From positions 1-64,000 of IMG/VR virus record IMGVR_UViG_3300043418_000114: a stretch of 64,000 nucleotides of DNA; one strand, given 5' to 3'. This document shows positions 8,004 through 59,365 of this stretch, piece after piece. Both the position numbers and the translations under genes were made by a program. Position 1 is the first letter of the stretch, and each line of letters begins with the position of its first letter. The notes below the pieces were generated by a model that ran no database searches, was not told the DNA's origin, and worked only from the letters and a program-made list of their open reading frames with translations.

Positions 8004-8419
8004 AATACATTGGACTAAGTCTCGGTGGTTGCTTGCAAAGTATTATGGCAGGCGAGGTGCCTGAGGACGATGTTATGTTTATCGTCACTCGCACCAATGC
8101 ACCTACGTTTGATCAATACATCAAAGTAGTAGAAGCCTATCATGGTCACGGAAACCCAACCGCTCGATACTTTCAAAATTATGAACTAAGTGATCATCCA
8201 CTTGATAACGTAACTGACCTTGCTATACGACTATGGAATAGTGGAAAGATTCATCAGCCTAGAGCTATCATAGGTGATGGATATGGATCATACCGTCATC
8301 CAGTTGAATATGGAGATGGAATATGGATGCAAGTTGTTCCAATCAAACAGAACACGAATCCAGCTGTGATCGAGGCGTGGGAAAAATATAAAGTTTTGGA
8401 TGCATTGACCCGTGACTGA
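8000..8419 (+). CDS. hypothetical protein
   Basis: 139 aa, ATGA overlap. Confidence 0.7.
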   Translation: MKYIGLSLGGCLQSIMAGEVPEDDVMFIVTRTNAPTFDQYIKVVEAYHGHGNPTARYFQNYELSDHPLDNVTDLAIRLWNSGKIHQPRAIIGDGYGSYRHPVEYGDGIWMQVVPIKQNTNPAVIEAWEKYKVLDALTRD

Positions 8420-8678
8420 TGTTATAATTTTGCCATCTAATTGGTATGGAAACAGGGAGTTGACATATACTCCACGGCACTTCACTATATCTAACACCGT
8501 ACTTACGCCAGAATCCAAAGTTTGGATTCTGAATAAGTTATCTGGAAGATTCAGCGTTGTTAGATGGACAGAGGCATCGGACGATGACATTTTCAGTCTT
8601 ATCACTGAGTCAGCAAATGGACGTCCTGCTTTCGAAGATCCAAAGGAATTAGTGTTTTACGAGCTAACCTGGTCATAA
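8412..8678 (+). CDS. small protein, dispersed LRW-family member
   Basis: ends PAFEDPKELVFYELTWS. Confidence 0.65.
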   Translation: MTDVIILPSNWYGNRELTYTPRHFTISNTVLTPESKVWILNKLSGRFSVVRWTEASDDDIFSLITESANGRPAFEDPKELVFYELTWS

Positions 8679-11780: not shown

Positions 11781-12313
11781 CACGTGATGAAATTATTCAT
11801 GCCCCTCAATCAACTGGTCCAGTGAGAGTATTAGGTCCGGTTAATCTTCCAGAATTGAGTAATTCATTAACACCTTTTGTTATTAAGGCTCTCAATGGAA
11901 CAACACAACAAGGGTTAAGATGGGCAGGTGACTTTGAAGGAGTCAGTGATCTAAGATACAGTGAAGCTAATCCTCGCAAAATTGGAGAAGAAGATTTCAA
12001 AGACTGGATTCCTGGCACAGAGACATTGCAGGAAGTAGCTAAAACATACGGCATACGTGATGTTGGTAGAGTTCGAATGCTCACCATGAAGCCTAAGTCA
12101 ACATACTCTCTACATCATGACCCTGATTTATGGAGAGTACACATTCCATTAATCACGAATTCAGATTCATTCATGTTCGTTGATGGCAAGATGTGGCATC
12201 TGCCCGTTGGGTTTGCATACTTGGTTCAGGTAGAGTATCATCATTTAGCAGTGAATGCAGGTGATGAAAATCGCATTCATGTTGTATTTGATTGGTGTGA
12301 CAATTTAGCATGA
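11777..12313 (+). CDS. Asp/Asn beta-hydroxylase-like 2OG-Fe(II) oxygenase
   Basis: RVRMLTM..LHHD..RVHIPL..HLAVNAGDENRIHVV double-stranded beta-helix pattern. Confidence 0.75.
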   Translation: MTRDEIIHAPQSTGPVRVLGPVNLPELSNSLTPFVIKALNGTTQQGLRWAGDFEGVSDLRYSEANPRKIGEEDFKDWIPGTETLQEVAKTYGIRDVGRVRMLTMKPKSTYSLHHDPDLWRVHIPLITNSDSFMFVDGKMWHLPVGFAYLVQVEYHHLAVNAGDENRIHVVFDWCDNLA

Positions 12314-12546
12314 AAGAGATTACCGTACATACAATTTACATGAGTGATGTAGAAGATCCTGATCTGATGGTTGCTCAACCTATATGGGAGTGGCAACAAA
12401 CAGAGAAGGGCAAATGGGTTATGGAAAATACAGTTGACCCTAGCTGGCATCGTGTAATGAATGTGTATACGTTCGGGTACGATTATCATATACGAGCCAA
12501 ATTCACACCAGAACAAATAACATTTTATAGATTGAAGTTTCAATGA
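12310..12546 (+). CDS. small protein, dispersed LRW-family-like
   Basis: W-rich; ends KFTPEQITFYRLKFQ. Confidence 0.65.
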   Translation: MKEITVHTIYMSDVEDPDLMVAQPIWEWQQTEKGKWVMENTVDPSWHRVMNVYTFGYDYHIRAKFTPEQITFYRLKFQ

Positions 12547-13514
12547 ACATTTTAGTTACCGGTGGCCTCGGTTTAATTGGGCACAACGTAGTTAAACGAC
12601 TGCAAGATTTAGGTCACATTGTATCCATCATGGATATTCAAACAAACTATGGCATCATTCCACAAGATGAAATTGATTACTTGATGGACGAACGTTTGAA
12701 GAAGATTCAAGATGTTGGTGGCATGTACAATTACGATATTTGTGATGCAAAACGCATGAGTACGGTATTCAACATCGAACAGCCAGAGATTGTAATTCAT
12801 ATGGCTAGTTTCCCAAGACAAAAAGTAGTTAACGCAAATCCCGCATGGGGAAGTCGCGTTATGAGTGAAGGGTTGCTCAACTTGTTGGAAGCTAGTAAGA
12901 ATTTCGAGGTACGAAAGTTCGTGTATATTAGTTCAAGTATGGTCTATGGAGACTTTAAGGATGATGTTACAGAAGATGCCATCTGTAAACCTCAAGGACA
13001 ATATGGTATTTTAAAATTAGCTGGAGAAGACCTTGTTAAAGACTATACTCGCCGTGACAACATTAGTCACACTATTATTCGCCCCTCTGCTGTTTATGGT
13101 CCACTTGACGTGGAAGACAGAGTTATTGCAAAGTTCATGCTCACAGCGTTGCGAGGTGGTACCCTTAATGTCAACGGCGCAAATGAAACTCTCGACTTCA
13201 CCTATGTTGAAGACGCCGCAGATGGAATCGTCGGTGCCGCACTAAGCGACAACACAGACAACAAGACCTACAATATCACCAAGAGTCACAGCCGTACATT
13301 ACTTGATGCCGCCAATCTCGCAGTGAAGATTGCAGGTAAAGGCACAATCAATGTGCGAGACAAAGATGCTGACTTCCCTAGTCGTGGTGCCCTAAACATT
13401 GATGCCGCACGTAGAGACTTTGGCTACGATCCTAAAGTCGATGTTGAAGAAGGCTTTCAGAAGTACTATGATTGGTTAAGCACCTCAGAGTACTGGACAA
13501 AGAAGAATGTTTGA
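12543..13514 (+). CDS. NAD-dependent nucleotide-sugar epimerase/dehydratase
   Basis: ILVTGGLGLIG, YISSSMVYG, YGILK (YxxxK), IRPSAVYGP, DFTYVED. Confidence 0.92.
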   Translation: MNILVTGGLGLIGHNVVKRLQDLGHIVSIMDIQTNYGIIPQDEIDYLMDERLKKIQDVGGMYNYDICDAKRMSTVFNIEQPEIVIHMASFPRQKVVNANPAWGSRVMSEGLLNLLEASKNFEVRKFVYISSSMVYGDFKDDVTEDAICKPQGQYGILKLAGEDLVKDYTRRDNISHTIIRPSAVYGPLDVEDRVIAKFMLTALRGGTLNVNGANETLDFTYVEDAADGIVGAALSDNTDNKTYNITKSHSRTLLDAANLAVKIAGKGTINVRDKDADFPSRGALNIDAARRDFGYDPKVDVEEGFQKYYDWLSTSEYWTKKNV

Positions 13515-13854
13515 CAAACTTTCAATACCAATTCTTCGGAAGTTACTGCCAGCTACTATTGCAAAAGATATAGTTGGCGTACAGCCGATGACACAGACTA
13601 ATCCTATCTTTCAAATGAAGGATGGCAAAGTTGCATTCAAAAACTTTGTGCTAGCGTCAAAGCAAGATGAATGTAACAATTACTCTGGTACCCATTATGC
13701 GGTGGACGTTCGCACTTTTGTCGCAGAATGGATAGAGACACAGCCAATTCATATGTGGAAGCCTGCTGATGACACAGAAGGATGCCAGGTTGTTTGTTCT
13801 CGATATATCATATGTGAAGAACTATTAACTTGGATGACACTCAAATGGGGATGA
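13507..13854 (+). CDS. small protein with capsid-like N-terminal motif and LRW-like tail
   Basis: IPILRKLLPATIAKDIVGVQPMT; ends LTWMTLKWG. Confidence 0.65.
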   Translation: MFDKLSIPILRKLLPATIAKDIVGVQPMTQTNPIFQMKDGKVAFKNFVLASKQDECNNYSGTHYAVDVRTFVAEWIETQPIHMWKPADDTEGCQVVCSRYIICEELLTWMTLKWG

Positions 13855-48186: not shown

Positions 48187-48489
48187 ATGGCAAAGAAAAA
48201 AGTAATGTCTGATATCTTTGAATTCGACGATGCCGATGAATATGAAACAGAATGGCGCGGCATGCCAGGGTTCAATCAACCAGATAATGGTGCATTCAGA
48301 CAGATTATCATTTCATTCGATGATCAAGCTGGCGTAGATGCGTTTGCTAGAGCAATCGGACAGACACTGACACCGAAAACAAAATCAGTTTGGTACCCAC
48401 CACGTCCAACTAATAAAGTGTTTGACTTGTTCTACTTTGACGAAAACACAGCACCACAAGAAGGCAAGGAAGAAGATGGCACAGCCTAA
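48187..48489 (+). CDS. small protein coupled to glycosyltransferase
   Basis: AGGAG RBS; EWRGMPGFNQ...KSVWYP. Confidence 0.75.
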   Translation: MAKKKVMSDIFEFDDADEYETEWRGMPGFNQPDNGAFRQIIISFDDQAGVDAFARAIGQTLTPKTKSVWYPPRPTNKVFDLFYFDENTAPQEGKEEDGTA

Positions 48490-49423
48490 GTATCCTCTGT
48501 ACATTCCAACAAAGGGTCGTGCTGATAGTCGATTGACAAGTAAAGCACTTGAGTTTATGAAAGTGCCACATTATCTTGTCGTAGAGCCACAAGAGTGTGA
48601 CATGTACCGAGAACATATTGCATTGTGGGAAAAAGAAACAGGTCTAACATCATGTGCTACCGTACTTGAGATGGATCTAAACTACAAACTCACGTATGAA
48701 CTACTTGACGATCTAGGACAAACTCGATCAACAGGTCCTGGCCCTGCACGTAATTTTGCATGGGATCATTCCATCAAAAATGGTCATGAGTGGCATTGGG
48801 TGATGGATGATAATATTAGAAACTTCCTGCGATTGCACAACAACCTAAAAATCAAAGTAGGTGATGGCACTTGTTTCCGTGTCATGGAAGATTTCTGTGA
48901 TCGTTATGAAAACGTCATGATGGCAGGGCCCAACTATCGTTCGTTTGCCTCACAGAATGCTAGCATGCCTCCGTTTGTTAAGAACACTCGTATCTACTCA
49001 TGTAACTTGATTCGCAATGATAGTAAGTGGGTCACTGGTGATCGTGCAGGTCAACCATTCCGCTGGCGTGGTCGCTATAACGAAGATACGATTATCTCGT
49101 TAGATATGTTGACTCAAGGATTCTGCACAGTGCAGTTTAATGCATTCTTGCAAGATAAACTCCGTACTCAAGTTCTTGGTGGTGGCAACACAGCAGAATT
49201 CTATGCTAAAGAAGGCACTGCACCAAAGAGTCGTATGCTCCAAGAAGCATATCCTGAATACACAGAACTTGTCTGGAAGTTCCAACGTGAGCATCATCAC
49301 GTGAACTATTTGCCATTCAAAGACATGAAGCTAAAGCGTAAGCCAGGTGTAAATCCAACTGGCGTCAATGACTATGGCATGAAAGTATACAGACTGCCAG
49401 ATGACTTCCCAGGCAGAGTTTAA
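48476..49423 (+). CDS. GREB1/TAGT-like GT-A glycosyltransferase
   Basis: YPLYIPTKGR, HWVMDDNI, YSCNLI, RGRYNEDT, TQVLGGGNT. Confidence 0.7.
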   Translation: MAQPKYPLYIPTKGRADSRLTSKALEFMKVPHYLVVEPQECDMYREHIALWEKETGLTSCATVLEMDLNYKLTYELLDDLGQTRSTGPGPARNFAWDHSIKNGHEWHWVMDDNIRNFLRLHNNLKIKVGDGTCFRVMEDFCDRYENVMMAGPNYRSFASQNASMPPFVKNTRIYSCNLIRNDSKWVTGDRAGQPFRWRGRYNEDTIISLDMLTQGFCTVQFNAFLQDKLRTQVLGGGNTAEFYAKEGTAPKSRMLQEAYPEYTELVWKFQREHHHVNYLPFKDMKLKRKPGVNPTGVNDYGMKVYRLPDDFPGRV

Positions 49424-49941: not shown

Positions 49942-50535
49942 ATGGCAACTAAGAAACCTACTGTACCAACCGATGAAAAACTAGAGAACCAAGACCTCAA
50001 TATCTTTGATGTGTTGGCGGCGTTGGATCGCAAAGATTATGACTACTATGATAGACTGAGTGAAGCACAACAAAAGAAGTTTGTGCCTTACTTGATCATT
50101 CAATGGATGAGTGCAGTCAAGGCTTCTAGTGAAGTTCAAGGCTATTATGTTATGAGTACAGAGTATAATGCCAACAAATATTTGTTCAACGAGAACGTAC
50201 AGAAGCATTCTAAGCTACAATGGCTAATGTTGTGTGCGGCAAGTCCTGGTATTGGTAAGCAATTCCATCAGTGGATTCCCAACATTAGCCCTAAAGTTGC
50301 GAAGCTAGAAACACCTGCAAAGATCAAAGACATAAAAGATTACTACAAAAAAATCTATCCAAAAGCAGACAGTGCCGATATCGATGCAGTGAGTGAAGCA
50401 TTTGTCCATGATCACAAACGAAAATCAAAATTGGCCAGTCTATTTCCTAACCTAAAGTTAGCTGATATTGAAACCCTAAATCAAGTTATCACAGACGAAG
50501 AAATTGAGAAATATGAGAAAGACCTCGGTAATTGA
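49942..50535 (+). CDS. possible clamp-loader small subunit (gp62-like)
   Basis: FVPYLIIQWMS and LQWLMLCAASPGIGKQFHQWI resemble gp62 patterns from memory. Confidence 0.45.
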   Translation: MATKKPTVPTDEKLENQDLNIFDVLAALDRKDYDYYDRLSEAQQKKFVPYLIIQWMSAVKASSEVQGYYVMSTEYNANKYLFNENVQKHSKLQWLMLCAASPGIGKQFHQWIPNISPKVAKLETPAKIKDIKDYYKKIYPKADSADIDAVSEAFVHDHKRKSKLASLFPNLKLADIETLNQVITDEEIEKYEKDLGN

Positions 50536-51217
50536 CAAGCCATTGAAATATGGATGTGAATTCTGTAAGCGTGAATTTGTAAAAGAAACAACGATGCTCA
50601 ATCACATCTGTGAATACAAACACAGATGGTTAGAAAAAGACAAACACAGCAACCGTGTTGGCTTTCAGGCATGGCTACAGTTCTATCAAAAGAACACAGC
50701 AAGCAAGAAAACCAAGACGTATGAAGAATTCATTAAATCAGCGTATTACACCGCGTTCATTAAGTTCGGTGCGTATTGCGTCGGAGTCAATGCTATCAAT
50801 ATCAGTCGATTTGTTGATTGGCTACTCAAGAATCAAATCAAGATTGACAACTGGTGTACTGATACTACATACAACAAGTATCTTGTTGAATACTTACGCA
50901 GTGAAGATCCATTTGATGCTATTCACCGTAGCATAGAAACAACAATCGAATGGGCAGAGAAAGATAATATTCAGCCGCGTGATTATCTACGCTATGGCAA
51001 CGCCAACCGTATCTGTCAGTTGATTAGCAACGGCAAGATATCTCCATGGTTGTTGTTTCAGAGCAACAGTGGTGTTAACTTTTTAGACACATTGACTCAG
51101 GATCATGTTAAACTGATATTTGATTATATTAACCCCGAACAATGGGCATTGAAATTTCACAGAGATCCAGAAAATGTCAGAGCAATCAAAGAAATCCTCA
51201 CTGCTGGGGGGTATTGA
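50513..51217 (+). CDS. hypothetical protein with N-terminal zinc finger
   Basis: CEFC...HIC. Confidence 0.7.
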   Translation: MRKTSVIDKPLKYGCEFCKREFVKETTMLNHICEYKHRWLEKDKHSNRVGFQAWLQFYQKNTASKKTKTYEEFIKSAYYTAFIKFGAYCVGVNAINISRFVDWLLKNQIKIDNWCTDTTYNKYLVEYLRSEDPFDAIHRSIETTIEWAEKDNIQPRDYLRYGNANRICQLISNGKISPWLLFQSNSGVNFLDTLTQDHVKLIFDYINPEQWALKFHRDPENVRAIKEILTAGGY

Positions 51218-51419
51218 CGTTGACCACGATTTTCGTGTAAAGATACCCTTTAACAATGTCTATGGGATGGTAAGTGACTGGCACGAACATTGTGCTACAG
51301 CAATTGAAATGTTTGGATTGCCCGGTGACAAGTTCACGTGTAGAATTACACATTCAGACATGGAGTTTTGGTTTCGTGATGAAAAAGATGCTATAATGTT
51401 TGAACTATGTTGCGGTTAA
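51174..51419 (+). CDS. LRW-array protein
   Basis: ends FWFRDEKDAIMFELCCG. Confidence 0.7.
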   Translation: MSEQSKKSSLLGGIDVDHDFRVKIPFNNVYGMVSDWHEHCATAIEMFGLPGDKFTCRITHSDMEFWFRDEKDAIMFELCCG

Positions 51420-51823
51420 AAGCAAGAATTCGCAAATGGAAAGCCGAGCGTAAACTCAAAAAGAGTGGATACGAGTCTTGGTCACAGTATAAACGCAATC
51501 GTGATGATGCAGTTAATGCGTATGCAAATGATGTTGACGAGTTCTACACTGGTTATCCATATGTGTATGCTTGTCTAGACTATAATCATTATGCATATAG
51601 CACACTATGGGACTATGGACCAGGTGGTCGCAGGCATGGCTGGCATGACATGATAGACTGGTGCGAAGAAAAGATAAGATGGAACTATCGATGTGATGTT
51701 CATTGTGTCTGGAAGAATGTTTGGGGCAAAATGGAGTTGAATGATATCGGAGGTCATGATATAATCTATTTCGCGTTCAAGCATGAACGAGATTATGTAC
51801 TGTTTATGTTGAGGTGGTCATGA
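51407..51823 (+). CDS. LRW-array protein (long)
   Basis: ends FAFKHERDYVLFMLRWS. Confidence 0.75.
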   Translation: MLRLKARIRKWKAERKLKKSGYESWSQYKRNRDDAVNAYANDVDEFYTGYPYVYACLDYNHYAYSTLWDYGPGGRRHGWHDMIDWCEEKIRWNYRCDVHCVWKNVWGKMELNDIGGHDIIYFAFKHERDYVLFMLRWS

Positions 51824-52038
51824 AATACTACAAGGCAAAGTTGCCAGAAGCCTATGCACGAGTAAAGTGGTGCAAAGAGGTGTTCGGCCGACCGTTTCAA
51901 GACGTACCTCAAGGCCAACGTAAGTGGCAAGACATGCGATGGTATAGAAATAAGGGCTATCTCTATTTCAAGGATGAAAAAGATTACATGTGGTATCAAT
52001 TAGTTTGGAGTGAACACCATGAGCAAAATAACACATAA
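51820..52038 (+). CDS. LRW-array protein
   Basis: LYFKDEKDYMWYQLVWS. Confidence 0.75.
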   Translation: MKYYKAKLPEAYARVKWCKEVFGRPFQDVPQGQRKWQDMRWYRNKGYLYFKDEKDYMWYQLVWSEHHEQNNT

Positions 52039-52261
52039 CACAGCGCACTATCATGGTAGCCAAAAAAACATCCATGAAGTAAAATGGGACCCAAGTGAAA
52101 TTGATGGTCGTGAAATCAAACGCTGGTGCATTCAGAACTTTGGCAAGTCTGGATATCAAGATGAAATCGAATGTGCTAGGTGGCTAGAAGAATTCGACAA
52201 GCATTCAATTACACTACTAAAGGATGAAGACTTAACTCTTTTCTTGTTGAGGTGGGAATGA
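52019..52261 (+). CDS. LRW-array protein
   Basis: ends KDEDLTLFLLRWE. Confidence 0.75.
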   Translation: MSKITHNTAHYHGSQKNIHEVKWDPSEIDGREIKRWCIQNFGKSGYQDEIECARWLEEFDKHSITLLKDEDLTLFLLRWE

Positions 52262-52494
52262 AAGTTGAAATTAAGTTTGTTCCAGAGAAACGACCCTATC
52301 ATGTTGATGTTAGGTGGAAGTCTAGAAATGATTGGAATGCATTAGAAGCATACTCATGGTGCGAGAAAAACTTTGGTCACAGAAATGACAAGTATGACAA
52401 CCCTCGCTGGTATGCTAACCCACGATACTTCACTGGAGACTTTAAGTTTCGTGACAAAAAAGATGCTGAATGGTTCTTGTTGAGGTGGGCATGA
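52258..52494 (+). CDS. LRW-array protein
   Basis: ends FKFRDKKDAEWFLLRWA. Confidence 0.8.
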   Translation: MKVEIKFVPEKRPYHVDVRWKSRNDWNALEAYSWCEKNFGHRNDKYDNPRWYANPRYFTGDFKFRDKKDAEWFLLRWA

Positions 52495-52706
52495 AATTAT
52501 ACATTAATAAACACTCAGATGATGTGGGTGAGCGTCGATTGCCACAATGGTGGTCTAACTTTGTAGAGTCAGTTGGACTAACCAAATGGCCAGATGAAGT
52601 ATTACCTAACTACAATGCATCGTTTGGAATTGATGACAATGAAGATATGTATTTACTATTCAATCACGACAGCGATGCCACCTATTTCTTGTTATTATGG
52701 TCATGA
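52491..52706 (+). CDS. LRW-array protein
   Basis: ends LFNHDSDATYFLLLWS. Confidence 0.75.
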   Translation: MKLYINKHSDDVGERRLPQWWSNFVESVGLTKWPDEVLPNYNASFGIDDNEDMYLLFNHDSDATYFLLLWS

Positions 52707-52915
52707 AGTATTACGCACCAATCAGTCCATCTCACAAAAATCTATCAGAAGAATGGAATCGATTTAGTTATTTCAAGCGATTGGAATACGATGACAACTT
52801 TTGGGACTGGGTGAAAAGAGAGCAGAAAGCAACTATGGATATTCATAGTCGTCCAGAAAGATGGATTTTTAATAAGCACGAAGATTGTATGGTGTTTATA
52901 TTGAGGTGGGCATGA
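52703..52915 (+). CDS. LRW-array protein
   Basis: ends IFNKHEDCMVFILRWA. Confidence 0.75.
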   Translation: MKYYAPISPSHKNLSEEWNRFSYFKRLEYDDNFWDWVKREQKATMDIHSRPERWIFNKHEDCMVFILRWA

Positions 52916-53202
52916 CATATAGACCAGATACTAATTCACCAGATTGGGTACGCAGTAAACTACCACCTGAGCGTGACAAGCTCTATGGAGATAGACTGTA
53001 TTATGTTGAGCCTGGTTGTGAATATGGCTTCCGAGAAGATGATGGCTATGTTTGGAATCGAATAAGCTGTAGCTATTGGTTTGGTGACTGGATCGAAGCG
53101 AACGGTAGAGCAGATCAATGGCGTATCTATGGTGGTCGTCACCGTGCTATCTATATTGTACGTGAAGACTTGATGGTGTTTATACGATTGAAATTTCTTT
53201 GA
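52912..53202 (+). CDS. LRW-array protein (divergent)
   Basis: ends VREDLMVFIRLKFL. Confidence 0.7.
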   Translation: MTYRPDTNSPDWVRSKLPPERDKLYGDRLYYVEPGCEYGFREDDGYVWNRISCSYWFGDWIEANGRADQWRIYGGRHRAIYIVREDLMVFIRLKFL

Positions 53203-53203
53203 T

Positions 53204-53464
53204 ATGACAGGATTCAAAAGCAAAAAAGCCATGAGTGCAAGATTCACTTTGGTAACAGATTCAAAGTACAAATTCAGTCGCAATTGGTACAGTGCATCAT
53301 TCAATCTTAAAGATTATGATGCAGTTGATGAATGGTGTGAACAACAGTTTGGCCCTCAAGATAGGCGACCAGACTCTTGGTCACGTTGGTGGCATAAGTT
53401 TGAGACTAGTATTCTTTTTCGTGATGAAAAAGATTATATGTTATTTGTGTTAAGATGGTCGTAA
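53204..53464 (+). CDS. LRW-array protein
   Basis: ends LFRDEKDYMLFVLRWS. Confidence 0.8.
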   Translation: MTGFKSKKAMSARFTLVTDSKYKFSRNWYSASFNLKDYDAVDEWCEQQFGPQDRRPDSWSRWWHKFETSILFRDEKDYMLFVLRWS

Positions 53465-53465
53465 T

Positions 53466-53720
53466 ATGAAACCTCGCATAGAACCAGAAACAGTATCTGC
53501 TATTTACAAATCATGGCTACGAGCGTGTGGCCTTGATGGCGAGTCGCTGAGTTATTGGAGCAATGACATTCATCGAGTTAATCTAAGTTTTGGAAATCCT
53601 AAACACTTTGACGAATATGTTTGGGGTTGCGGTGGTAGAATCTACCAAGAAAATGGCAAGCGATACATTGAATTCTTTGAAGATTCGAACTTGACTATGT
53701 TTTTATTGAAGTGGCTATAA
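53466..53720 (+). CDS. LRW-array protein
   Basis: ends EFFEDSNLTMFLLKWL. Confidence 0.75.
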   Translation: MKPRIEPETVSAIYKSWLRACGLDGESLSYWSNDIHRVNLSFGNPKHFDEYVWGCGGRIYQENGKRYIEFFEDSNLTMFLLKWL

Positions 53721-53923
53721 TGGAGTATCAACGTTATCCTCAATATACTAGCAATTACACGAATGTAATTGTGAGTCAGGACTGGCGGAGCGCGATGAAA
53801 GCAGATCAAGTTGCTTGGTTGAAGAATCATCAAGGTGGAATGTATCATATTCATCGTAGTGGCACTGCTATCAAGTTTGAGCGCAAAGAAGATGCTGAAT
53901 GGTTTATCTTGAGGTTTCTATGA
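53720..53923 (+). CDS. LRW-array protein
   Basis: ends KFERKEDAEWFILRFL. Confidence 0.75.
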   Translation: MEYQRYPQYTSNYTNVIVSQDWRSAMKADQVAWLKNHQGGMYHIHRSGTAIKFERKEDAEWFILRFL

Positions 53924-54177
53924 AAGTATTGAGATACAACGCGAAATATGACAAGTCTAATGAGTCTTTTGAGACCTGGAAAAAAGTCAATAATGTCATT
54001 CAACAAAACATGACTCCTGAAATCAAAAAGCGATGGCTTATAGATGGTTATATAGGACTCAATGAATGTGCATTAGATTACTTTGGAATCAATCGTATCT
54101 ATCGTGACAACAACCAATCTACTGTATTCGAATTCACTGAGCACCAGTGGACTATGTTTGTGTTGAGGTGGCTATGA
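53920..54177 (+). CDS. LRW-array protein
   Basis: ends EFTEHQWTMFVLRWL. Confidence 0.75.
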   Translation: MKVLRYNAKYDKSNESFETWKKVNNVIQQNMTPEIKKRWLIDGYIGLNECALDYFGINRIYRDNNQSTVFEFTEHQWTMFVLRWL

Positions 54178-54446
54178 TTAGAGTAATGATATCCGACCAT
54201 GGCAATGAATCACCATACATGTGGTGGTACAAGTTTCTCGGCAGTGTTAAGCCATCCAAGTATGGCATGACGGTTGAAGCCCGTATAGATGTTATCAACA
54301 CTGAATTAATGAATTGGTCCGCACAATTATGGCAAAATGAACCAATCCCGCATGAACTGGGTACTACTGTTTCCAAATATCGTAACGTTTATCTTGACTT
54401 TTATGACGAGCAGGCGCATACTTGGTTTGTGTTGAGGTGGGCATGA
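54174..54446 (+). CDS. LRW-array protein
   Basis: ends DFYDEQAHTWFVLRWA. Confidence 0.75.
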   Translation: MIRVMISDHGNESPYMWWYKFLGSVKPSKYGMTVEARIDVINTELMNWSAQLWQNEPIPHELGTTVSKYRNVYLDFYDEQAHTWFVLRWA

Positions 54447-54652
54447 ACATAGAATTCAAATACAATCCATTTAAACAATACCCATGGAGATGGTACTATA
54501 GTCCACAGGGTGAAGAATTTGCCGAAGTTATGCTATGGTTGTATGACACATATGGTTCACCGATTCGCAATAGTAGATGGGACATCAATCGTGGCTGGAT
54601 TAGTTTTGCAGACAAAAAAGATGCTGAATGGTTTAAATTAAGATGGAGCTAG
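54443..54652 (+). CDS. LRW-array protein
   Basis: ends SFADKKDAEWFKLRWS. Confidence 0.8.
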   Translation: MNIEFKYNPFKQYPWRWYYSPQGEEFAEVMLWLYDTYGSPIRNSRWDINRGWISFADKKDAEWFKLRWS

Positions 54653-54897
54653 AACTATCTGAAGGTCGTGTAGCAGGAGCACGATATCACACAGCAAAGC
54701 CAATATTTAATATGGATGCTTTGTATGGGTTCGATGACACCACATGGAGATCAATGATTGAATGGTGCGTCAATACATATGGTTCTACTCCGTCTGACGG
54801 AGTGTGGACTCCTGGCTCACGATGGTATAGTAACAATGCTAAGTTCTGGTTCAGAGAGCGAAAAGACTTAGAGTGGTTTATCATTAGATGGCAATAA
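54643..54897 (+). CDS. LRW-array protein
   Basis: ends FWFRERKDLEWFIIRWQ. Confidence 0.8.
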   Translation: MELELSEGRVAGARYHTAKPIFNMDALYGFDDTTWRSMIEWCVNTYGSTPSDGVWTPGSRWYSNNAKFWFRERKDLEWFIIRWQ

Positions 54898-55133
54898 TAT
54901 TGCAAAATTACGATCAATCAAAAGGCTGGGAACTAACTCAGCCTGGTTGGTACGAGCATAAAATCACTATTGGTGAATCTAGTATGTCCGAAACATACGA
55001 AGAAGTATTGTATTGGTTGTATAATCGTATTGACAATTGTGAGCGCCATGCTAGATGGATAATCTCTAGGAATCTGATCAAAATCAGATTCAGGCATGAG
55101 CGTGACATAATACTATGTAGATTGAGTTTCTAA
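54888..55133 (+). CDS. LRW-array protein
   Basis: ends RFRHERDIILCRLSF. Confidence 0.7.
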   Translation: MAIILQNYDQSKGWELTQPGWYEHKITIGESSMSETYEEVLYWLYNRIDNCERHARWIISRNLIKIRFRHERDIILCRLSF

Positions 55134-55336
55134 TGACATTAGATTTGAATCCATTGCCTTATTATACAGCGATAGACATTATCAAGTGGTGCTTTGAAAA
55201 TAATGTAGACCGTGAAAAGGCAATCTTTTTGACTGAAATGATGGGCATAGTCCCTGATGATTGGCCAGCTGATTTAGAATGGACATTAGAGATTCCAGAA
55301 GCATATGCAACTTGGATAACATTGAGATTTACATGA
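55133..55336 (+). CDS. LRW-array protein (divergent)
   Basis: ends IPEAYATWITLRFT. Confidence 0.7.
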   Translation: MTLDLNPLPYYTAIDIIKWCFENNVDREKAIFLTEMMGIVPDDWPADLEWTLEIPEAYATWITLRFT

Positions 55337-55533
55337 TAAAGAGACAATATAACAGAGGACAACCTGGTTATTTTAATAACTTCATTTTATCGCATGACCC
55401 AGAAGGCACGATAGAAGAAGAATTAAAATTATACAAGGCTACTATAGCAAAAAGTAAAAACAAACATTACAGAATGAATGTAAAGTGGTATGACCACGAA
55501 CTATATGTAATTTTTGTATTGAGGTATTCATGA
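55333..55533 (+). CDS. LRW-array protein
   Basis: ends WYDHELYVIFVLRYS. Confidence 0.7.
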   Translation: MIKRQYNRGQPGYFNNFILSHDPEGTIEEELKLYKATIAKSKNKHYRMNVKWYDHELYVIFVLRYS

Positions 55534-55709
55534 CAACGATTACTATTCTTTGTCGTGTTACCTGGTGGGAACAATGTCAATGGATATATAAAAATTGCAC
55601 CGACGCTGTAGATAGAACAGACTGGGGATTGTGGCAATTAGGACAAAGTGATATTCACTTTGATTTAGATGAAAAAGACGCCGTATGGTTTAACTTAATG
55701 TGGGTATGA
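55530..55709 (+). CDS. LRW-array protein (59 aa, missed by ORF track)
   Basis: manual translation ends FDLDEKDAVWFNLMWV. Confidence 0.7.
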   Translation: MTTITILCRVTWWEQCQWIYKNCTDAVDRTDWGLWQLGQSDIHFDLDEKDAVWFNLMWV

Positions 55710-56134
55710 ATATGACTGACAATGAATTGATTGATTACACTATTAAATTTGACAACGACCCTGTTCGTGTCAGACTTGCCACGTACATGGAGCGTCATCC
55801 AGGTGCCATTCTAGATGACCTTGAACGAGCAGGCATGGACGAAACGTGGTGCACCTTTCGTAGTGTCGTAACATGCACTGAATATCTTCCCGGTCAATAC
55901 ATCAGTCACCTTGAAAATGAAATTGAGTACTTACAAGAACAACTAAAGCAAGCACATGATGAAATTGAAGAAATGAAACCAATGAAGGTCAGTGATTTGA
56001 TTTCTCAATTGCGTGAAGCAATCACTACAGAGAAACATAGCAGAGAACGAGCAGAAAACAAGCGTTGGCAAGCAGAAAAAGAGCGTGAAGATATGAAAAA
56101 CAAGCTCGACATGTGGGCGATATTGAATCGATGA
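55706..56134 (+). CDS. coiled-coil hypothetical protein interrupting the array
   Basis: no LRW tail; long helical C-terminus. Confidence 0.7.
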   Translation: MNMTDNELIDYTIKFDNDPVRVRLATYMERHPGAILDDLERAGMDETWCTFRSVVTCTEYLPGQYISHLENEIEYLQEQLKQAHDEIEEMKPMKVSDLISQLREAITTEKHSRERAENKRWQAEKEREDMKNKLDMWAILNR

Positions 56135-56355
56135 ACATCAAGGTAAAAGAGCTAATGCGTGAATGGTTCGAAGAAGAAGAACTCAATAATAAGTACTGGC
56201 CCTATCAGTATGCAGTCAAAGACTGGCAACATATCCATATGGTTGAACGATTCTGTTATGGCAATTTCAAAAGCAAGAACTGGCGCAATCGTGGCAGATA
56301 CTTTGGATTCAAACGCAAACAAGACTATGAGTGGTTCTTACTGAGATGGCTATGA
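56131..56355 (+). CDS. LRW-array protein
   Basis: ends FGFKRKQDYEWFLLRWL. Confidence 0.8.
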   Translation: MNIKVKELMREWFEEEELNNKYWPYQYAVKDWQHIHMVERFCYGNFKSKNWRNRGRYFGFKRKQDYEWFLLRWL

Positions 56356-56537
56356 AGCAGTATGGTCTTGCTATCGAACGTTGGACTTGGCAACACAAGC
56401 GCGAAGTTAAAATGTGGCTTGTTGAAAACTTTGGAGTCAATGGAGGTCGCTGGGGCGAACAGCCAGACTATGGTTTAGAAAATCTTTGGATGGACGAAGA
56501 TGTTTATATGATGTACTTACTGCGATGGCAAAGTTAA
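56352..56537 (+). CDS. LRW-array protein
   Basis: ends MDEDVYMMYLLRWQS. Confidence 0.75.
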   Translation: MKQYGLAIERWTWQHKREVKMWLVENFGVNGGRWGEQPDYGLENLWMDEDVYMMYLLRWQS

Positions 56538-56773
56538 AATCATTCAAGGGCAATCTGATGACTCACAAACATCGAGGTCATCGTTGGACTGTGAGAGTCG
56601 CTGGCAAAATCGATGATGAAGTTTTCAACTGGTTAAGTGATAACTGGGGTGAAGAAGATTTTGAAAATGGTCCCTGGGCTAAAATGTATTCAGCCTGGGA
56701 TTATCATGGTCACGCCACTTATGATGTGACTGATCCTAAGATTATTACTATGATGAAATTGAGGTTTGAATAA
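56525..56773 (+). CDS. LRW-array protein
   Basis: ends VTDPKIITMMKLRFE. Confidence 0.7.
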   Translation: MAKLKSFKGNLMTHKHRGHRWTVRVAGKIDDEVFNWLSDNWGEEDFENGPWAKMYSAWDYHGHATYDVTDPKIITMMKLRFE

Positions 56774-57057
56774 TGGAATACTTTTATGGTGGGGGCGGGA
56801 ACAATCGCCCCGTTTTTACATACAGATTCAAAGTAAAAAAGTGTACTAATGAAATGTACAAGTGGGCAGAAGCATATCCTGAGAAGGGTCCTTTCAGTCG
56901 TTGGCACGTTGAGTGGGCAGGTGCTTATAGCAAAATGGACAGTCCTAGAGAATATGATGTGGTACAGTTTGAACACAGCGAAGCCGCTAAGATATTCAGA
57001 ATCGCATTCGCAGGTGAGTATGAAGATATCACCATGAAAGAATATAAACTTGATTAG
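56773..57057 (+). CDS. LRW-array protein (divergent)
   Basis: QFEHSEAAKIFRIAF plus short extension. Confidence 0.7.
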   Translation: MEYFYGGGGNNRPVFTYRFKVKKCTNEMYKWAEAYPEKGPFSRWHVEWAGAYSKMDSPREYDVVQFEHSEAAKIFRIAFAGEYEDITMKEYKLD

Positions 57058-57268
57058 TGTTAGGATTGAGCGAGATAAACCCGACGAGATAATGGAACTC
57101 GTTAGAGACCTACGTAAGAGAGGGTACGCACAGGGAATAGACTTTGACTTTAAGTTTATACCGGCTGAGATTGACCATAAAAGCTATCAAGTTATTAACA
57201 AAAAGCATACAATGTTTATATTCTATAAAGAGGAAATTGCCACATGGTTCACGCTACTATATCAATAG
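57050..57268 (+). CDS. LRW-array protein
   Basis: TTG start; ends FYKEEIATWFTLLYQ. Confidence 0.65.
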   Translation: MISVRIERDKPDEIMELVRDLRKRGYAQGIDFDFKFIPAEIDHKSYQVINKKHTMFIFYKEEIATWFTLLYQ

Positions 57269-57528
57269 AACAAACACAACATCCAGATTTAGAAGATGAA
57301 CTGGCTAAGATTTTACAGGAAGAAATCGACTGGGAAATCTTAGCTGGTATGTTCGTAAAGATGGGTTGGATCATGATTGACTTGCCACGATTCCATGATA
57401 GATACGAAGCGGTTGATGTTGAATTGTGGATCGATGAAAATTGTAGTGGCAAACACATGAAGCGAGGCAAGACGTTTGTGTTTGAAAATAAACAAGACGC
57501 TGAATGGTTTAGTCTACGATGGCTATAA
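57244..57528 (+). CDS. LRW-array protein
   Basis: ends FENKQDAEWFSLRWL. Confidence 0.75.
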   Translation: MVHATISIEQTQHPDLEDELAKILQEEIDWEILAGMFVKMGWIMIDLPRFHDRYEAVDVELWIDENCSGKHMKRGKTFVFENKQDAEWFSLRWL

Positions 57529-57860
57529 AGATTGCGTGGGGCAGAAGCATAAACTTCAACATAGAGCTACACAAGGCACGTATGAGTTACAACGGCGCAA
57601 ACAAATTTAATCCTAGTCCAGGAAAGCAGTACATGGAATACACAATCATAACCGATGGTGCAGACTGCTACCCTTGGCACGAATACTTTGCTATCTTGCC
57701 ACGCAAGACAATTAGTGGCACTCGCATCTTCTGGGAGAAAGCATACAAGCGTAAAGTTTGGGTAGTATGGGGCACAGGCTTTCATATGGAACCAGAAACT
57801 CAATACGCAACTGCATTTGATTTATTAACACATGGCGATCAAAATACCTTTAAGACATGA
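57519..57860 (+). CDS. hypothetical protein interrupting the array
   Basis: WHEYFAILPRKTISGTRIFW; no LRW tail. Confidence 0.65.
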   Translation: MAIKIAWGRSINFNIELHKARMSYNGANKFNPSPGKQYMEYTIITDGADCYPWHEYFAILPRKTISGTRIFWEKAYKRKVWVVWGTGFHMEPETQYATAFDLLTHGDQNTFKT

Positions 57861-58056
57861 TACACTCACGGGTGAGCAACAGCAATGGCTTGCTCATAAC
57901 GTAGGACCACGTATGCACCATCTGCACAATAGCATTGGCGGTGAAGGCTGGCTAGCCAAGCAAGAGTGGGATCCAGAAATGGTGACTAGGCGATGGTATC
58001 TTACACTAGAAGACGATAAACTCGCCACATTTTTTACATTAAAGTTTTCATCATAA
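57832..58056 (+). CDS. LRW-array protein
   Basis: ends LEDDKLATFFTLKFSS. Confidence 0.7.
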   Translation: MAIKIPLRHDTLTGEQQQWLAHNVGPRMHHLHNSIGGEGWLAKQEWDPEMVTRRWYLTLEDDKLATFFTLKFSS

Positions 58057-58334
58057 TGGCTACAGTACCTCCCTTTCAAGATTATGACGATGACGATCCA
58101 GAGATAGAGTTTCGCAAGAAACGCTGGGACTACTGGTCGGCATTAAAGCTAGTTCGCAAAGAATACATAGAAACATTAGATCAACTAGCTGGTCAATTCG
58201 ATGCATATGATTTTGAAGATTACATAGAAGCAAACTACGGCATCAAGATGAACATTGTAGACGGTAACATCACTGATGGATATAAGATCATGGATGAAGC
58301 CAAGTACACGTTCTTTCTTTTAAAGTTTCAATAA
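58056..58334 (+). CDS. LRW-array protein
   Basis: ends IMDEAKYTFFLLKFQ. Confidence 0.75.
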   Translation: MATVPPFQDYDDDDPEIEFRKKRWDYWSALKLVRKEYIETLDQLAGQFDAYDFEDYIEANYGIKMNIVDGNITDGYKIMDEAKYTFFLLKFQ

Positions 58335-58591
58335 TGACATTCAGACAAATAGTTGATTATAACGATGTAGATGAACCCATCACATTTAGAAAGTTCAAGA
58401 AGACGGTGCATAACGGCACTGATTGGGAAGATATGATTTTCTATGAGATAAAAGAGAAGGTCTGGGATGCTCAGTCTTGGCTAAAAGAAAAATACGGTAA
58501 CCAAGTATACTGTAAAACTTGGTGGCAAACTCATACAAGTATTTGTATGTCCGAAAAGATTTACACACATTATGCTTTAAGTGTATTATAG
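58334..58591 (+). CDS. LRW-array protein (divergent)
   Basis: ends MSEKIYTHYALSVL. Confidence 0.65.
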   Translation: MTFRQIVDYNDVDEPITFRKFKKTVHNGTDWEDMIFYEIKEKVWDAQSWLKEKYGNQVYCKTWWQTHTSICMSEKIYTHYALSVL

Positions 58592-58607
58592 CATAAAGGA
58601 ATATATT

Positions 58608-59162
58608 ATGAGTACTCATGTAATGATAGACATTGAATCACTGCACACCTCACCAGACTGTGTGATTCTTACAATTGGTGCGGTATTGTTTGATCCATGT
58701 GGACAAGGCATGATCGACAAGATTGAAATCAGACCAACAATCGACGATCAAACAGAAGTTTATGATCGTAAAATTAATGATGACACGATTGCATGGTGGG
58801 GCAGACAGTCACCAGAAGCCATCGAGGAAGCACTAGGAGACCGAGACCGCGTTTCTTTTCCAGAAGCAATGGCGCAGTTACACAAGTTCTGCTGGAATCG
58901 TGCTAAGAGTCCCTGGAGCAACGGAGCAACATTCGACATTATCGTAATGGAGAATGCATTTCGTCAACTAGGCATGGTACCACCATGGAACTTCTGGGAT
59001 ATTCGTGACACGCGCACATTGTATGATGTTACTGGCGTTAAATTAAAAGACGGCGGACACGTTACTAGTCACAAAGCGGTAGAAGATGCAGAGCGCCAAG
59101 CAATTGTTGTACAACAAGGCTACATGAAATTAATGAAAGCAGGATTGGTCGCGCCGCGATGA
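58608..59162 (+). CDS. DEDDh 3'-5' exonuclease (DexA/Rv2179c-like)
   Basis: VMIDIESL, WSNGATFD, RDTRT, HKAVEDA. Confidence 0.88.
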   Translation: MSTHVMIDIESLHTSPDCVILTIGAVLFDPCGQGMIDKIEIRPTIDDQTEVYDRKINDDTIAWWGRQSPEAIEEALGDRDRVSFPEAMAQLHKFCWNRAKSPWSNGATFDIIVMENAFRQLGMVPPWNFWDIRDTRTLYDVTGVKLKDGGHVTSHKAVEDAERQAIVVQQGYMKLMKAGLVAPR

Positions 59163-59365
59163 TTAAAATCACAAAGCACCCACTTGAACGCAGAAGCTAT
59201 ATGCTCACTGCTGACGAAGATAAGACAACCAACCGCGAAGACTGGAAAGAACTTCAATCTTGGCTTAATGCGAACGCTAGTGGCTGGGTGCTTAACAGTG
59301 GCATACTAACTTTACCTAAAGAGTTGCCATCTATTGAAACATATTTTACACTGAGATTCGGATGA
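59159..59365 (+). CDS. LRW-array-like protein
   Basis: ends PSIETYFTLRFG. Confidence 0.65.
   Translation: MIKITKHPLERRSYMLTADEDKTTNREDWKELQSWLNANASGWVLNSGILTLPKELPSIETYFTLRFG

What the first reader, a model, noticed from the sequence alone, without database searches (positions are those of the whole stretch)
51174..59365. Tandem array of about 29 small paralogous genes sharing a W-rich C-terminal module (LRW family)
Seen: between a zinc-finger gene and the exonuclease, nearly every ORF is about 59-140 aa, overlaps its neighbours, and ends in a variant of (F/Y)-x-F-x-x-(E/K)-x-D-(A/Y)-x-x-F-x-L-(R/K)-(W/F). Many also have a central W(C/L)-x-x-x-FG and a further Trp. N-terminal and loop regions are highly divergent. 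My manual count is about 29 members, including a 59-aa member the ORF track misses, interrupted by only three unrelated genes. Inference: a massively expanded single small fold with a fixed scaffold and variable surface, as expected for a diversified panel of binders (anti-defence or host-takeover inhibitors) or a gene-accordion region. I cannot assign it to a family I know.
Basis: partly seen in the sequence, partly recalled or inferred. Interest (0 to 1): 0.9.

Follow-up and report, generated by a model that had tools for sequence, protein, structure and literature searches.

The report
Coupled array of small Trp-rich phage genes
A 364-kb uncultivated jumbo phage carries a head-to-tail array of about two dozen small genes from one uncharacterised, virus-only protein family, and the family's "LRW" tail is also the ribosome-binding site and start codon of the next gene.

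Summary
The array is real. Between the zinc-finger gene and the exonuclease, every + strand gene is 59-142 aa and abuts its neighbour. 18 genes are strong paralogues, 5 more are supported by profile comparison, and 6 share only the tail, so "about 29" is an upper bound.

An AlphaFold model gives a small beta-beta-alpha-beta-beta-alpha domain with a Trp-rich core. Pfam, PHROGs, NCBIfam and PDB give no match. The family is large: 1458 clusters in metagenomes, none found in cellular genomes. In 80 IMG/VR loci it forms arrays of up to 30 copies, and all 841 hits lie on one strand.

L-R-W-x-stop is written TTG AGG TGG nnA TGA, which holds GAGGTG (a Shine-Dalgarno site) and an ATGA stop/start overlap. 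At this Arg the rare codon AGG is used in 9/17 cases here and 357/495 family-wide, against 1.5-10% elsewhere. 93% of junctions leave no gap.

The paralogues are old (at most 49% identical, orthologues under purifying selection), so this is not a recent accordion. Order and content differ between related phages. Some members carry a major-capsid or P-loop fragment at the N-terminus.

Function is untested. My best guess is a co-translated panel of binders built on one scaffold.

The parts
50504..51217 (+). Upstream anchor: C2H2 zinc-finger gene (phrog_11058). It is conserved and syntenic in related phages.
51174..51419 (+). Strong member. The start is uncertain (51174 or 51267). The tail has degenerated to ELCCG.
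51407..51823 (+). Strong member, 138 aa, with a basic N-terminal extension. This add-on recurs in 28 members from other phages.
51820..52038 (+). Strong member with a 9-residue extension after the Trp.
52019..52261 (+). Strong member.
52258..52494 (+). Strong member. This is the gene modelled by AF2 (b-b-a-b-b-a, pLDDT 78). Its orthologues are 73-78% identical, with dN/dS 0.11.
52491..52706 (+). Strong member; the tail is LLW.
52703..52915 (+). Member supported by profile-profile comparison (hhalign 95%).
52912..53202 (+). Unresolved. It shares only the C-terminal R-L-K-F ending.
53204..53464 (+). Strong member of the most widespread subfamily (KYKFSR type). 141 relatives were found in IMG/VR.
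53466..53720 (+). Strong member.
53720..53923 (+). Strong member; the tail is LRF.
53920..54177 (+). Strong in the in-window profile, weak with the external-only profile (E 0.34).
54174..54446 (+). Strong member.
54443..54652 (+). Strong member. The next gene's ATG lies inside its R-W codons.
54643..54897 (+). Strong member, the best external-profile hit (E 2e-25).
54888..55133 (+). Strong member; the tail has degenerated to RLSF.
55133..55336 (+). Member supported by hhalign (94%). It has an orthologue in L001.
55333..55533 (+). Unresolved; only the tail matches (VLRY).
55530..55709 (+). Strong member, 59 aa.
55706..56134 (+). Non-member, 142 aa, unknown function. It is conserved in relatives at 50-57% identity.
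56131..56355 (+). Strong member. Its L001 orthologue carries a major-capsid-protein N-terminal fragment.
56352..56537 (+). Strong member.
56525..56773 (+). Probable member (hhalign 40-59%; external profile E 0.025).
56773..57057 (+). Unresolved by sequence. It is highly conserved (79 clusters at 53-91% identity). The AF2 model shows the same b-a-b-b-a order as the family core.
57050..57268 (+). Member supported by hhalign (53%, then 78% after one iteration). TTG or later ATG start.
57244..57528 (+). Strong member.
57519..57860 (+). Non-member, 113 aa. It is 98% identical to its L006 orthologue.
57832..58056 (+). Member supported by hhalign (83%).
58056..58334 (+). Unresolved (hhalign 19-24%, the same as the best negative control).
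58334..58591 (+). Unresolved; it fits the pattern by eye only.
58608..59162 (+). Downstream anchor: exonuclease (phrog_255; Pfam Rv2179c-like in the orthologues).
59159..59365 (+). Unresolved small gene after the exonuclease; the tail is TLRF.
13507..13854 (+). Family member outside the array (hhalign 97%). It is a major-capsid (gp23) N-terminal fragment joined to a divergent family domain. Its orthologues lie inside the arrays of L004, L006 and L007.
8409..8675 (+). Possible further member outside the array (hhalign 45% over 68 columns).

Best explanation
The region is one long polycistronic block of an old multigene family.

Shown:
(1) Each gene encodes a 60-95 aa single domain, modelled as beta-beta-alpha-beta-beta-alpha. 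Its conserved residues are mostly aromatic or hydrophobic (W, W-C-x3-F-G, R-W, F-x-F, D-A-x-x-F-x-L-R-W). N-termini, loops and net charge vary freely.
(2) The last five codons of nearly every member are written (T)TG AGG TGG nnA TGA. This puts GAGGTG five bases before an ATG that overlaps the stop. That hexamer is complementary to the 16S rRNA 3' end (established knowledge). Where Arg is AGA or CGA, or Lys is AAA, the ATG of the next gene lies inside the (R/K)-W codons.
(3) Order, number and content of members differ between related phages. Orthologues are under purifying selection.

Inferred:
- Ribosomes that finish one member re-initiate on the next. The whole set would then be made from one mRNA without promoters or intergenic RBSs of its own.
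- Any member can be inserted, lost or moved without silencing what follows. The 25-57 nt conserved junctions give the homology for unequal or ectopic recombination that reshuffles the array.
- The products are a panel of small, stable binding modules. Each would present a different surface, or in some relatives an N-terminal fragment of the major capsid protein or of a P-loop ATPase, to a different host or rival-phage target. That would mean host takeover, counter-defence or interference.

The architecture and the coupling signal are well supported. The binder function is a guess.
For: Family reality:
- Pairwise and profile searches in the window.
- A profile made only from external homologues ranks 23 array genes above every one of about 710 other ORFs.
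- 1458 representative clusters at E<=1e-3 among 1.84 billion proteins, all 52-145 aa, with the match at the C-terminal end.
- 841 hits in 80 IMG/VR loci, all on the + strand and none on the minus strand, with up to 30 per 16 kb.

Fold:
- AF2 pLDDT 78, pTM 0.65, b-b-a-b-b-a.

Dual coding:
- Junction sequences.
- In the window, Arg at the L-R-W position is AGG 9, AGA 6, CGA 2 and CGT 0 of 17. Large ORFs use AGG 1.5% and CGT 57% (Fisher 9e-11).
- Close relatives show the same pattern.
- Family-wide, AGG is used in 357/495 cases against 9% in large ORFs and 10% inside the same genes. Exactly one residue follows the aromatic in 549/600. Junctions are ATGA 373, TAATG/TGATG 99, ATG inside the (R/K)W codons 85, and any gap only 43 of 600.
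- Other genes of the window use AGGA/GGAG-type sites.
- There is no excess of promoter-like sites and no intergenic room.

Real genes and old paralogues:
- pN is far below pS, and dN/dS is 0.06-0.18 where dS is not saturated. Paralogues are at most 49% identical.

Plasticity:
- The arrays sit between the same anchors with 9 to more than 18 members, in scrambled order. About 10 window genes lack an orthologue.
- Conserved junction repeats of 25-57 nt.
- A second array of 12 members lies elsewhere in the same genome.

Variable surface:
- pI 4.1-9.5.

Add-ons:
- Pfam Gp23 1.6e-8 and phrog_138 1.2e-8 on the N-termini of some members.
Against: - No experiment or expression data exist, and the phage is uncultivated, so translation and coupling are inferred from sequence.
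- No structural or sequence link to any known binder, anti-defence or host-takeover protein.
- The AF2 model is only moderately confident and rests on 18 paralogues.
- Six of the 29 ORFs cannot be shown to belong.
- Conservation of L-R-W could be due to the RBS, to the protein, or to both. I could not separate the two.
- Recombination at the junctions is inferred from the repeats and the scrambled order. No breakpoint was demonstrated.
Confidence: 0.5

Rival explanations
1. Selfish, near-neutral cassettes. The family spreads and persists because its 3' end carries an RBS and start for whatever follows. Insertion anywhere in an operon is then harmless, and the conserved ends promote copying by recombination. 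The proteins would do little for the phage.
For: - Scrambled order and gain or loss between relatives.
- A copy at 13507 whose orthologues sit inside arrays elsewhere.
- Conserved junction repeats.
- 93% gap-free junctions family-wide.
- In cyanophage S-PM2, a comparable 9.5-kb block of 33 small ORFs was lost spontaneously and carried a fitness cost in the laboratory (PMC4503421).
Against: - Orthologues are kept across diverged phages under purifying selection (dN/dS 0.06-0.18).
- A folded domain core is conserved in 1458 clusters.
- No nuclease, recombinase or integrase lies in or next to the arrays examined.
- The S-PM2 ORFs are unrelated to this family.
Confidence: 0.15
2. Virion-associated proteins: capsid-internal or ejected proteins, decoration factors or assembly factors, as suggested by the members that carry a major-capsid N-terminal segment.
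For: - Major-capsid N-terminal fragments are fused to the domain in window 13507, L006 9358-9744, L001 8666-9013, P0018, P0029 and P0060.
- T4 internal-protein loci are also variable cassettes (own knowledge, not tested here).
Against: - Only about 2% of members carry the fragment (14 of 709).
- The array sits among replication genes: helicase, exonuclease, a DNA polymerase piece and a DnaB-like helicase.
- The members share no N-terminal targeting sequence.
- No T4-type late promoter motif occurs in the window.
Confidence: 0.1
3. Small regulators that bind nucleic acid or the translation machinery, with a SUI1/eIF1-like or DCoH-like fold.
For: - Repeated weak Foldseek matches to eIF1, aIF1, YciH and eIF2D (TM 0.45-0.49).
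- The capsid segment fused to some members aligns with T4 gp23 residues about 94-127. That falls in the first quarter of the protein, where the EF-Tu-binding Gol region lies (PMC3014915).
Against: - All PDB matches have E>0.3.
- There is no conserved basic surface, and pI ranges from 4.1 to 9.5.
- The paper read does not give the Gol coordinates. The overlap rests on my recollection of residues 93-122.
Confidence: 0.07
4. A recent gene accordion: tandem amplification of one gene under strong selection for dosage, as in poxvirus K3L or T4 tifA.
For: - Tandem, same-strand copies with short repeats at the junctions.
- T4 is reported to amplify a counter-defence gene by recombination (bioRxiv 10.1101/2022.04.14.488369, listed; abstract only).
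Against: - The best in-window paralogue identity is 22-49% over partial lengths.
- Many members have closer orthologues in other phages.
- There are no near-identical copies.
Confidence: 0.03

Closest known systems
Hyperplastic regions of T4-type phages with PeSL-mediated modular shuffling (PMC2839356, PMC4122927)
   Same: Blocks of small, variable genes of unknown function lie between conserved core genes of a large myovirus. Content differs between close relatives. Short conserved sequences at gene boundaries are proposed as recombination points.
   Different: PeSLs are intergenic promoter-plus-stem-loop cassettes between unrelated genes. Here there is no intergenic space, no excess of promoter- or terminator-like sites, and the genes are paralogues. 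The conserved boundary is the coding 3' end together with the RBS and start codon.
S-PM2 cyanophage 'ORFanage' (33 small ORFs in 9.5 kb; PMC4503421)
   Same: It has the same look: dozens of small, same-strand ORFs of unknown function in about 10 kb of a T4-like phage. They are also reported from freshwater and hypersaline metagenomes.
   Different: There is no sequence relationship. The family profile finds nothing at E<1 in NC_006820 4000-17500. The S-PM2 ORFs are not described as paralogues and lack the L-R-W tail.
Translational coupling by ATGA/TAATG overlaps with the Shine-Dalgarno site inside the upstream gene (general bacterial and phage operon feature; own knowledge)
   Same: The mechanism is the same: stop/start overlap, an SD inside the preceding coding sequence, and the codon choice at gene 3' ends bent to fit.
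   Different: Here the signal is fixed at the same three codons of a protein-family signature in hundreds of paralogues across many phages. It therefore shows up as a conserved amino-acid motif.
Multigene families of large DNA viruses and gene accordions (poxvirus K3L; T4 tifA amplification, bioRxiv 10.1101/2022.04.14.488369)
   Same: A tandem expansion of one gene family in a large viral genome, generally read as host-interaction repertoires.
   Different: The copies here are ancient and diverged, not recent amplicons. The units are single 60-95 aa domains joined by translational coupling.
SUI1/eIF1 (YciH) and DCoH-like two-layer alpha/beta folds
   Same: The same order of secondary-structure elements (b-b-a-b-b-a), and weak Foldseek matches with TM 0.45-0.49.
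   Different: No match is significant (E>0.3), there is no sequence similarity, and the last strand of SUI1 is absent.

Membership tests
The unnamed 'LRW' small-domain family (as defined here by profile) | A significant match to a profile built from homologues outside the window. | tested here: met
   17 array genes at E<0.002. The top 23 of 741 window ORFs are all array genes. Six candidates do not reach this level.
The unnamed 'LRW' small-domain family | The domain sits at the C-terminal end and finishes hydrophobic-x-L-(R/K)-W plus one residue and stop, written with an SD-like GAGGTG or an internal ATG. | tested here: met
   Window junctions. Family-wide, 549/600 have one residue after the aromatic, AGG is used in 357/495, and 93% of junctions are gap-free.
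The unnamed 'LRW' small-domain family | One shared fold (b-b-a-b-b-a). | tested here: inconclusive
   One strong member was modelled (pLDDT 78). One unresolved gene (56773) was modelled with the same b-a-b-b-a order, but Foldseek gave no significant cross-match. Only two models were possible.
Any curated protein family (Pfam-A, PHROGs v4, NCBIfam) or solved structure | A match above threshold. | tested here: not met
   No consistent hit for 31 window proteins or 10 external homologues. A PDB profile search found none at E<=1. Foldseek PDB best E 0.37; BFVD best E 2e-3, to uncharacterised uncultured-phage proteins.
T4-type hyperplastic region shuffled by PeSLs | Intergenic early-promoter plus stem-loop cassettes between the variable genes. 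| tested here: not met
   Genes overlap and only two gaps of 16 and 34 nt exist. Promoter-like sites number 49 against 41 expected, and no terminator-like site lies at a junction.
Gene accordion | Near-identical recent tandem copies. | tested here: not met
   The best paralogue identity is 22-49%, and the orthologues are closer.
S-PM2 ORFanage ORFs | Sequence homology to S-PM2p017-050. | tested here: not met
   No profile hit at E<1 in the region.
T4 internal-protein (IP) cassettes | A shared N-terminal capsid-targeting sequence with a prohead-protease cleavage site. | tested here: not met
   The N-termini of members share nothing beyond the initiator Met in the alignments. The IP signal itself was not searched for with a model.
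Integron-like cassette array | attC-type recombination sites at cassette ends and a nearby integrase. | not tested
   No integrase-like gene is among the annotated neighbours. The conserved ends are coding and vary mostly at synonymous positions. attC structure was not searched for.
Known anti-defence proteins (Acr, Ocr/Ard-type mimics and others) | Homology to, or demonstrated inhibition of, a defence system. | not testable with these tools
   No anti-defence library was at hand. PDB and BFVD comparisons gave no such match.

The most novel reading that the evidence does not exclude
The domain is a general display scaffold. Many uncultivated large phages would hold it as a hard-wired, co-translated repertoire. 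Each copy would show a different surface or a decoy piece of the phage's own most conserved proteins, namely the EF-Tu-binding Gol-like stretch of the major capsid protein and the P-loop stretch of a DnaB/RecA-type ATPase. These would blunt host immune sensors that recognise such proteins, or poison the assembly of rival phages. The codon-embedded RBS would make the repertoire freely reshufflable.
Probability: 0.12. Interest if true: 0.9.

Novelty: new variant of a known kind. Interest (0 to 1): 0.62.

Why it matters
- It defines a large, virus-only protein family (about 1500 clusters at 50% identity, arrays of up to 30 copies) that is absent from Pfam, PHROGs, NCBIfam and the PDB. The family accounts for a visible share of the "dark" small genes of uncultivated jumbo phages.
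- It is a clean case of a protein-family signature that is also an RNA signal. It warns against reading C-terminal motifs as purely structural, and it suggests how phages keep long arrays of small genes expressed and shufflable without promoters.
- If the members are binders or decoys, the arrays are a ready-made library of candidate host-takeover or counter-defence proteins.

Tried and rejected
- Megablast of the array against GenBank phages found no match. tblastn of two members against the same collection found nothing usable. The family is therefore not visible in cultured phages at this sensitivity.
- Pfam, PHROGs and NCBIfam found no family hit. A PDB sequence-profile search found none. 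Foldseek PDB gave only insignificant SUI1-like or mixed hits.
- S-PM2 ORFanage homology was tested and rejected.
- The scan of 185,579 cellular genomes confirmed no relative. The first attempt with the broad alignment failed for lack of a conserved stretch.
- Window 12310-12546, with an LKF-type tail, is not supported as a member (hhalign below 1%).
- I first took window 13507-13854 for a false positive because of its Gp23 hit. It turned out to be a true divergent member with a capsid-fragment add-on.
- All-against-all hhalign of the weak genes linked them only through about 17 C-terminal residues, so they do not form a second demonstrable family.
- Promoter and terminator scans, the T4 late-promoter motif, Rfam and tRNA scans gave nothing informative.
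- For the P-loop add-on, similarity to the neighbouring DnaB-like helicase is weak (E 0.003 pairwise, Pfam DnaB_C E 0.045) and remains a lead only.

Full report
**Setting**

The window is positions 1-64000 of IMGVR_UViG_3300043418_000114, a 364,247-bp viral contig. It has no close relative among GenBank phages. Its zinc-finger gene (50504-51217) and its rIIA gene are 29-40% identical to those of jumbo myoviruses such as PA5oct, Atu_ph07, SCTP-2 and the 121Q/Rak2 group.

The finding lies in a co-directional block among replication-type genes. Upstream are a helicase, a glucosyltransferase-like gene and the zinc-finger gene. Downstream are an exonuclease and a DNA-polymerase piece.

Yes, in the main. 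From 51174 to 59365 the + strand is packed with 59-142 aa ORFs. Once starts are placed at the ATG next to the previous stop, they overlap by 1, 4, 10 or 13 nt. Only two gaps exist, of 16 and 34 nt.

A simple regex for the tail hits 21 array ORFs and only 3 of the roughly 390 other ORFs of the window.

- Pairwise phmmer links 17 genes.
- An in-window profile gives 18 strong members.
- A profile built only from 150 homologues from other metagenomes ranks 23 array genes above every other ORF of the window, 17 of them at E<0.002.
- Profile-profile comparison supports 52703, 55133, 57832 and 57050, and less firmly 56525.
- Six genes (52912, 55333, 56773, 58056, 58334, 59159) do no better than the best negative control.

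So "about 29" is an upper bound and 23 is what can be shown.

**What the protein is**

The alignment consensus is W ... W-(C/L)-x3-(F/Y)-G ... R-W ... F-x-F-x-(D/E)-x-x-D-(A/Y)-x-x-F-x-L-R-W-x. AlphaFold2 on 52258-52494 with its 17 paralogues gives strand-strand-helix-strand-strand-helix (pLDDT 78, pTM 0.65). I infer that the conserved aromatic residues form the core.

- Member pI runs from 4.1 to 9.5. Trp is 5.5% of residues against 1.2% in large ORFs.
- Nothing matches in Pfam, PHROGs, NCBIfam or the PDB by sequence.
- Foldseek finds no significant PDB match. It gives only repeated weak SUI1/eIF1-type hits (TM 0.45-0.49, E>0.3).
- In BFVD it finds only uncharacterised proteins of uncultured phages (best E 2e-3).
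- One unresolved gene, 56773, was modelled from 21 orthologues (pLDDT 77.5). It shows the same strand-helix-strand-strand-helix order, but without a significant cross-match. The single-fold claim is therefore plausible but not settled for the weak members.

**How widespread it is**

The 18-member profile finds 1458 representative clusters (E<=1e-3) among 1.84 billion. All are 52-145 aa, the match is always at the C-terminal end, and nearly all end L-(R/K)-W plus one residue. All named ones are "hypothetical protein" with no Pfam domain.

A scan of 185,579 bacterial and archaeal genomes found no relative. A scan of IMG/VR with one subfamily found 141.

Over the 80 fetched loci (1.04 Mb, 10,460 ORFs) the profile gives 841 hits. 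All are on the strand of the seed gene and none on the other strand. There are up to 30 per 16 kb, in L085. The same genome as the window holds a second array of 12 members near 200 kb (L057).

**The tail is dual-coded**

The junctions read (T)TG AGG TGG nnA TGA. That places GAGGTG, complementary to the 16S 3' end (established knowledge), five bases before an ATG that overlaps the stop. Where Arg is AGA or CGA, or Lys is AAA, the next gene's ATG sits inside the (R/K)-W codons, as for 54643, 54888, 56525 and 57519.

Codon choice shows selection at the nucleotide level:

| Set | AGG at the motif Arg | Comparison |
|---|---|---|
| Window | 9 of 17 (AGA 6, CGA 2, CGT 0) | Large ORFs: AGG 1.5%, CGT 57%; Fisher 9e-11 |
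| Relatives L001, L004, L006, L007 | 23 of 33 | Large ORFs: AGG 10.5%, CGT 24% |
| 703 distinct members in 80 loci | 357 of 495 (72%) | 9% in large ORFs, 10% inside the same genes |

Among the 600 of those 703 members whose tail fits the motif:

- Exactly one residue follows the aromatic in 549, which fixes the SD-to-ATG spacing.
- Junctions are ATGA in 373, TAATG/TGATG in 99, and an ATG inside the codons in 85.
- Only 43 have any gap.

Other genes of the window use ordinary AGGA/GGAG sites. The array has no room for promoters and no excess of promoter- or terminator-like sites.

I infer that the array is read from one mRNA by termination-reinitiation, and that each member carries the initiation region for whatever lies after it. 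Whether L-R-W is kept for the protein, for the RBS or for both cannot be separated with these data.

**Age and dynamics**

Orthologues in related contigs show pN far below pS, and dN/dS is 0.06-0.18 where dS is not saturated. These are real genes under purifying selection.

In-window paralogues are at most 49% identical over partial lengths, and many members have closer orthologues in other phages. The duplications are therefore old, and a recent accordion is ruled out.

Related phages carry the array between the same zinc-finger and exonuclease anchors. They have 9 (L004), 17 (L006) and at least 18 (L007) profile hits, in a different order. About ten window genes have no orthologue, and L006 has an ATP-grasp gene inserted in its array.

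The junctions form 25-57 nt direct-repeat families. Combined with the self-contained RBS, this gives a plausible route to reshuffling by recombination at the conserved 3' ends. That step is inferred; no breakpoint was shown.

**N-terminal add-ons**

Among members of at least 125 aa from the IMG/VR loci, three N-terminal modules recur.

- A basic segment, as in window 51407, occurs in 28.
- A P-loop stretch (D-I-E-S-G-G ... G-R-x-x-G-K-S) occurs in 17. It weakly resembles the Walker-A region of DnaB/RecA-type ATPases (Pfam DnaB_C E 0.045; E 0.003 against the DnaB-like helicase of L004).
- An N-terminal fragment of the T4-type major capsid protein occurs in 9 (Pfam Gp23 1.6e-8, phrog_138 1.2e-8).

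The window's own example is 13507-13854. It lies between an epimerase and an aminotransferase gene. It is a family member by hhalign (97%), and its orthologues lie inside the arrays of L004, L006 and L007.

The capsid stretch aligns with T4 gp23 residues about 94-127. A review states that the 29-residue Gol region lies in the first quarter of gp23, is its most conserved part and binds EF-Tu (PMC3014915). Placing Gol at residues 93-122 is my recollection, not verified here. This is a lead to function, not evidence.

**Comparison with what is known**

- The closest known setting is the hyperplastic regions of T4-type phages, where PeSL cassettes mediate shuffling (PMC2839356, PMC4122927). PeSLs are intergenic promoter/stem-loop units between unrelated genes, and that feature is not met here.
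- The S-PM2 "ORFanage" looks alike and was shown to be dispensable and costly in culture (PMC4503421). It is unrelated by profile.
- Translational coupling through ATGA overlaps is ordinary. What is unusual is that it is frozen into the signature of a protein family across hundreds of paralogues.

**Verdict**

This is a real, old, translationally coupled multigene family of a new small domain. It is expanded to about 23-29 copies here, with at least 12 more elsewhere in the genome, and it is common in uncultivated large phages.

Its function is unknown. I commit to a co-expressed panel of binding modules for host or rival targets as the most likely reading (roughly one in three). A near-neutral selfish-cassette reading is the main rival.

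Noticed in passing
window 13507-13854: A 115-aa gene between an epimerase and an aminotransferase gene. Its residues 3-38 match the major-capsid (gp23) profile, and its C-terminal half is a divergent family domain ending TLKWG. Its orthologues sit inside the arrays of L004, L006 and L007, so the gene has moved.
   Followed up: yes
L057 (same contig as the window, positions 193472-209687, reversed): A second array of 12 family members in the same 364-kb genome, outside the window.
   Followed up: partly
L085 (IMGVR_UViG_3300025723_000017, 154-kb contig): 30 family members within 16 kb, all on one strand. This is the largest array seen.
   Followed up: partly
window 57519-57860: A non-family 113-aa gene that is 98% identical to its L006 orthologue (pS 0.21). 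Flanking genes are 62-70% identical (pS about 0.77). This suggests recent exchange or unusually strong constraint.
   Followed up: partly
window 56773-57057: A 94-aa gene inside the array that is far more conserved than its neighbours: 79 clusters at 53-91% identity, on contigs up to 360 kb. By sequence it cannot be tied to the family, although its predicted secondary-structure order is the same.
   Followed up: yes
P0009, P0028, P0036, P0104; L030 5265-5675 and 16 similar: Family members with an N-terminal P-loop stretch (G-R-x-x-G-K-S). It weakly resembles the Walker-A region of the DnaB-like helicase encoded a few kb downstream of the array in relatives.
   Followed up: partly
L001 11900-13900 (also L002, L003): A more distant relative carries HSP20, ClpS, heme oxygenase and a ferredoxin-dependent bilin reductase next to its array. 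These are auxiliary genes typical of cyanophages, which hints at a cyanobacterial host for that lineage.
   Followed up: no
L006 7737-8918: An ATP-grasp (GARS_A-like) gene of 393 aa lies inside that phage's array. It is absent from the window's array.
   Followed up: no
window 8409-8675 and 12310-12546: Two further small genes outside the array with family-like tails. The first is a possible member (hhalign 45% over 68 columns). The second is not supported.
   Followed up: yes
window 48422-49423: A gene matching the PHROG for beta-glucosyl-HMC alpha-glucosyltransferase, which suggests a glucosylated, hypermodified DNA base as in T-even phages.
   Followed up: no
window 1-64000: No tRNA gene, no Rfam family at gathering score, and no TATAAATA (T4 late-promoter motif) anywhere in 64 kb. 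About 2.8 of the last would be expected by chance.
   Followed up: partly
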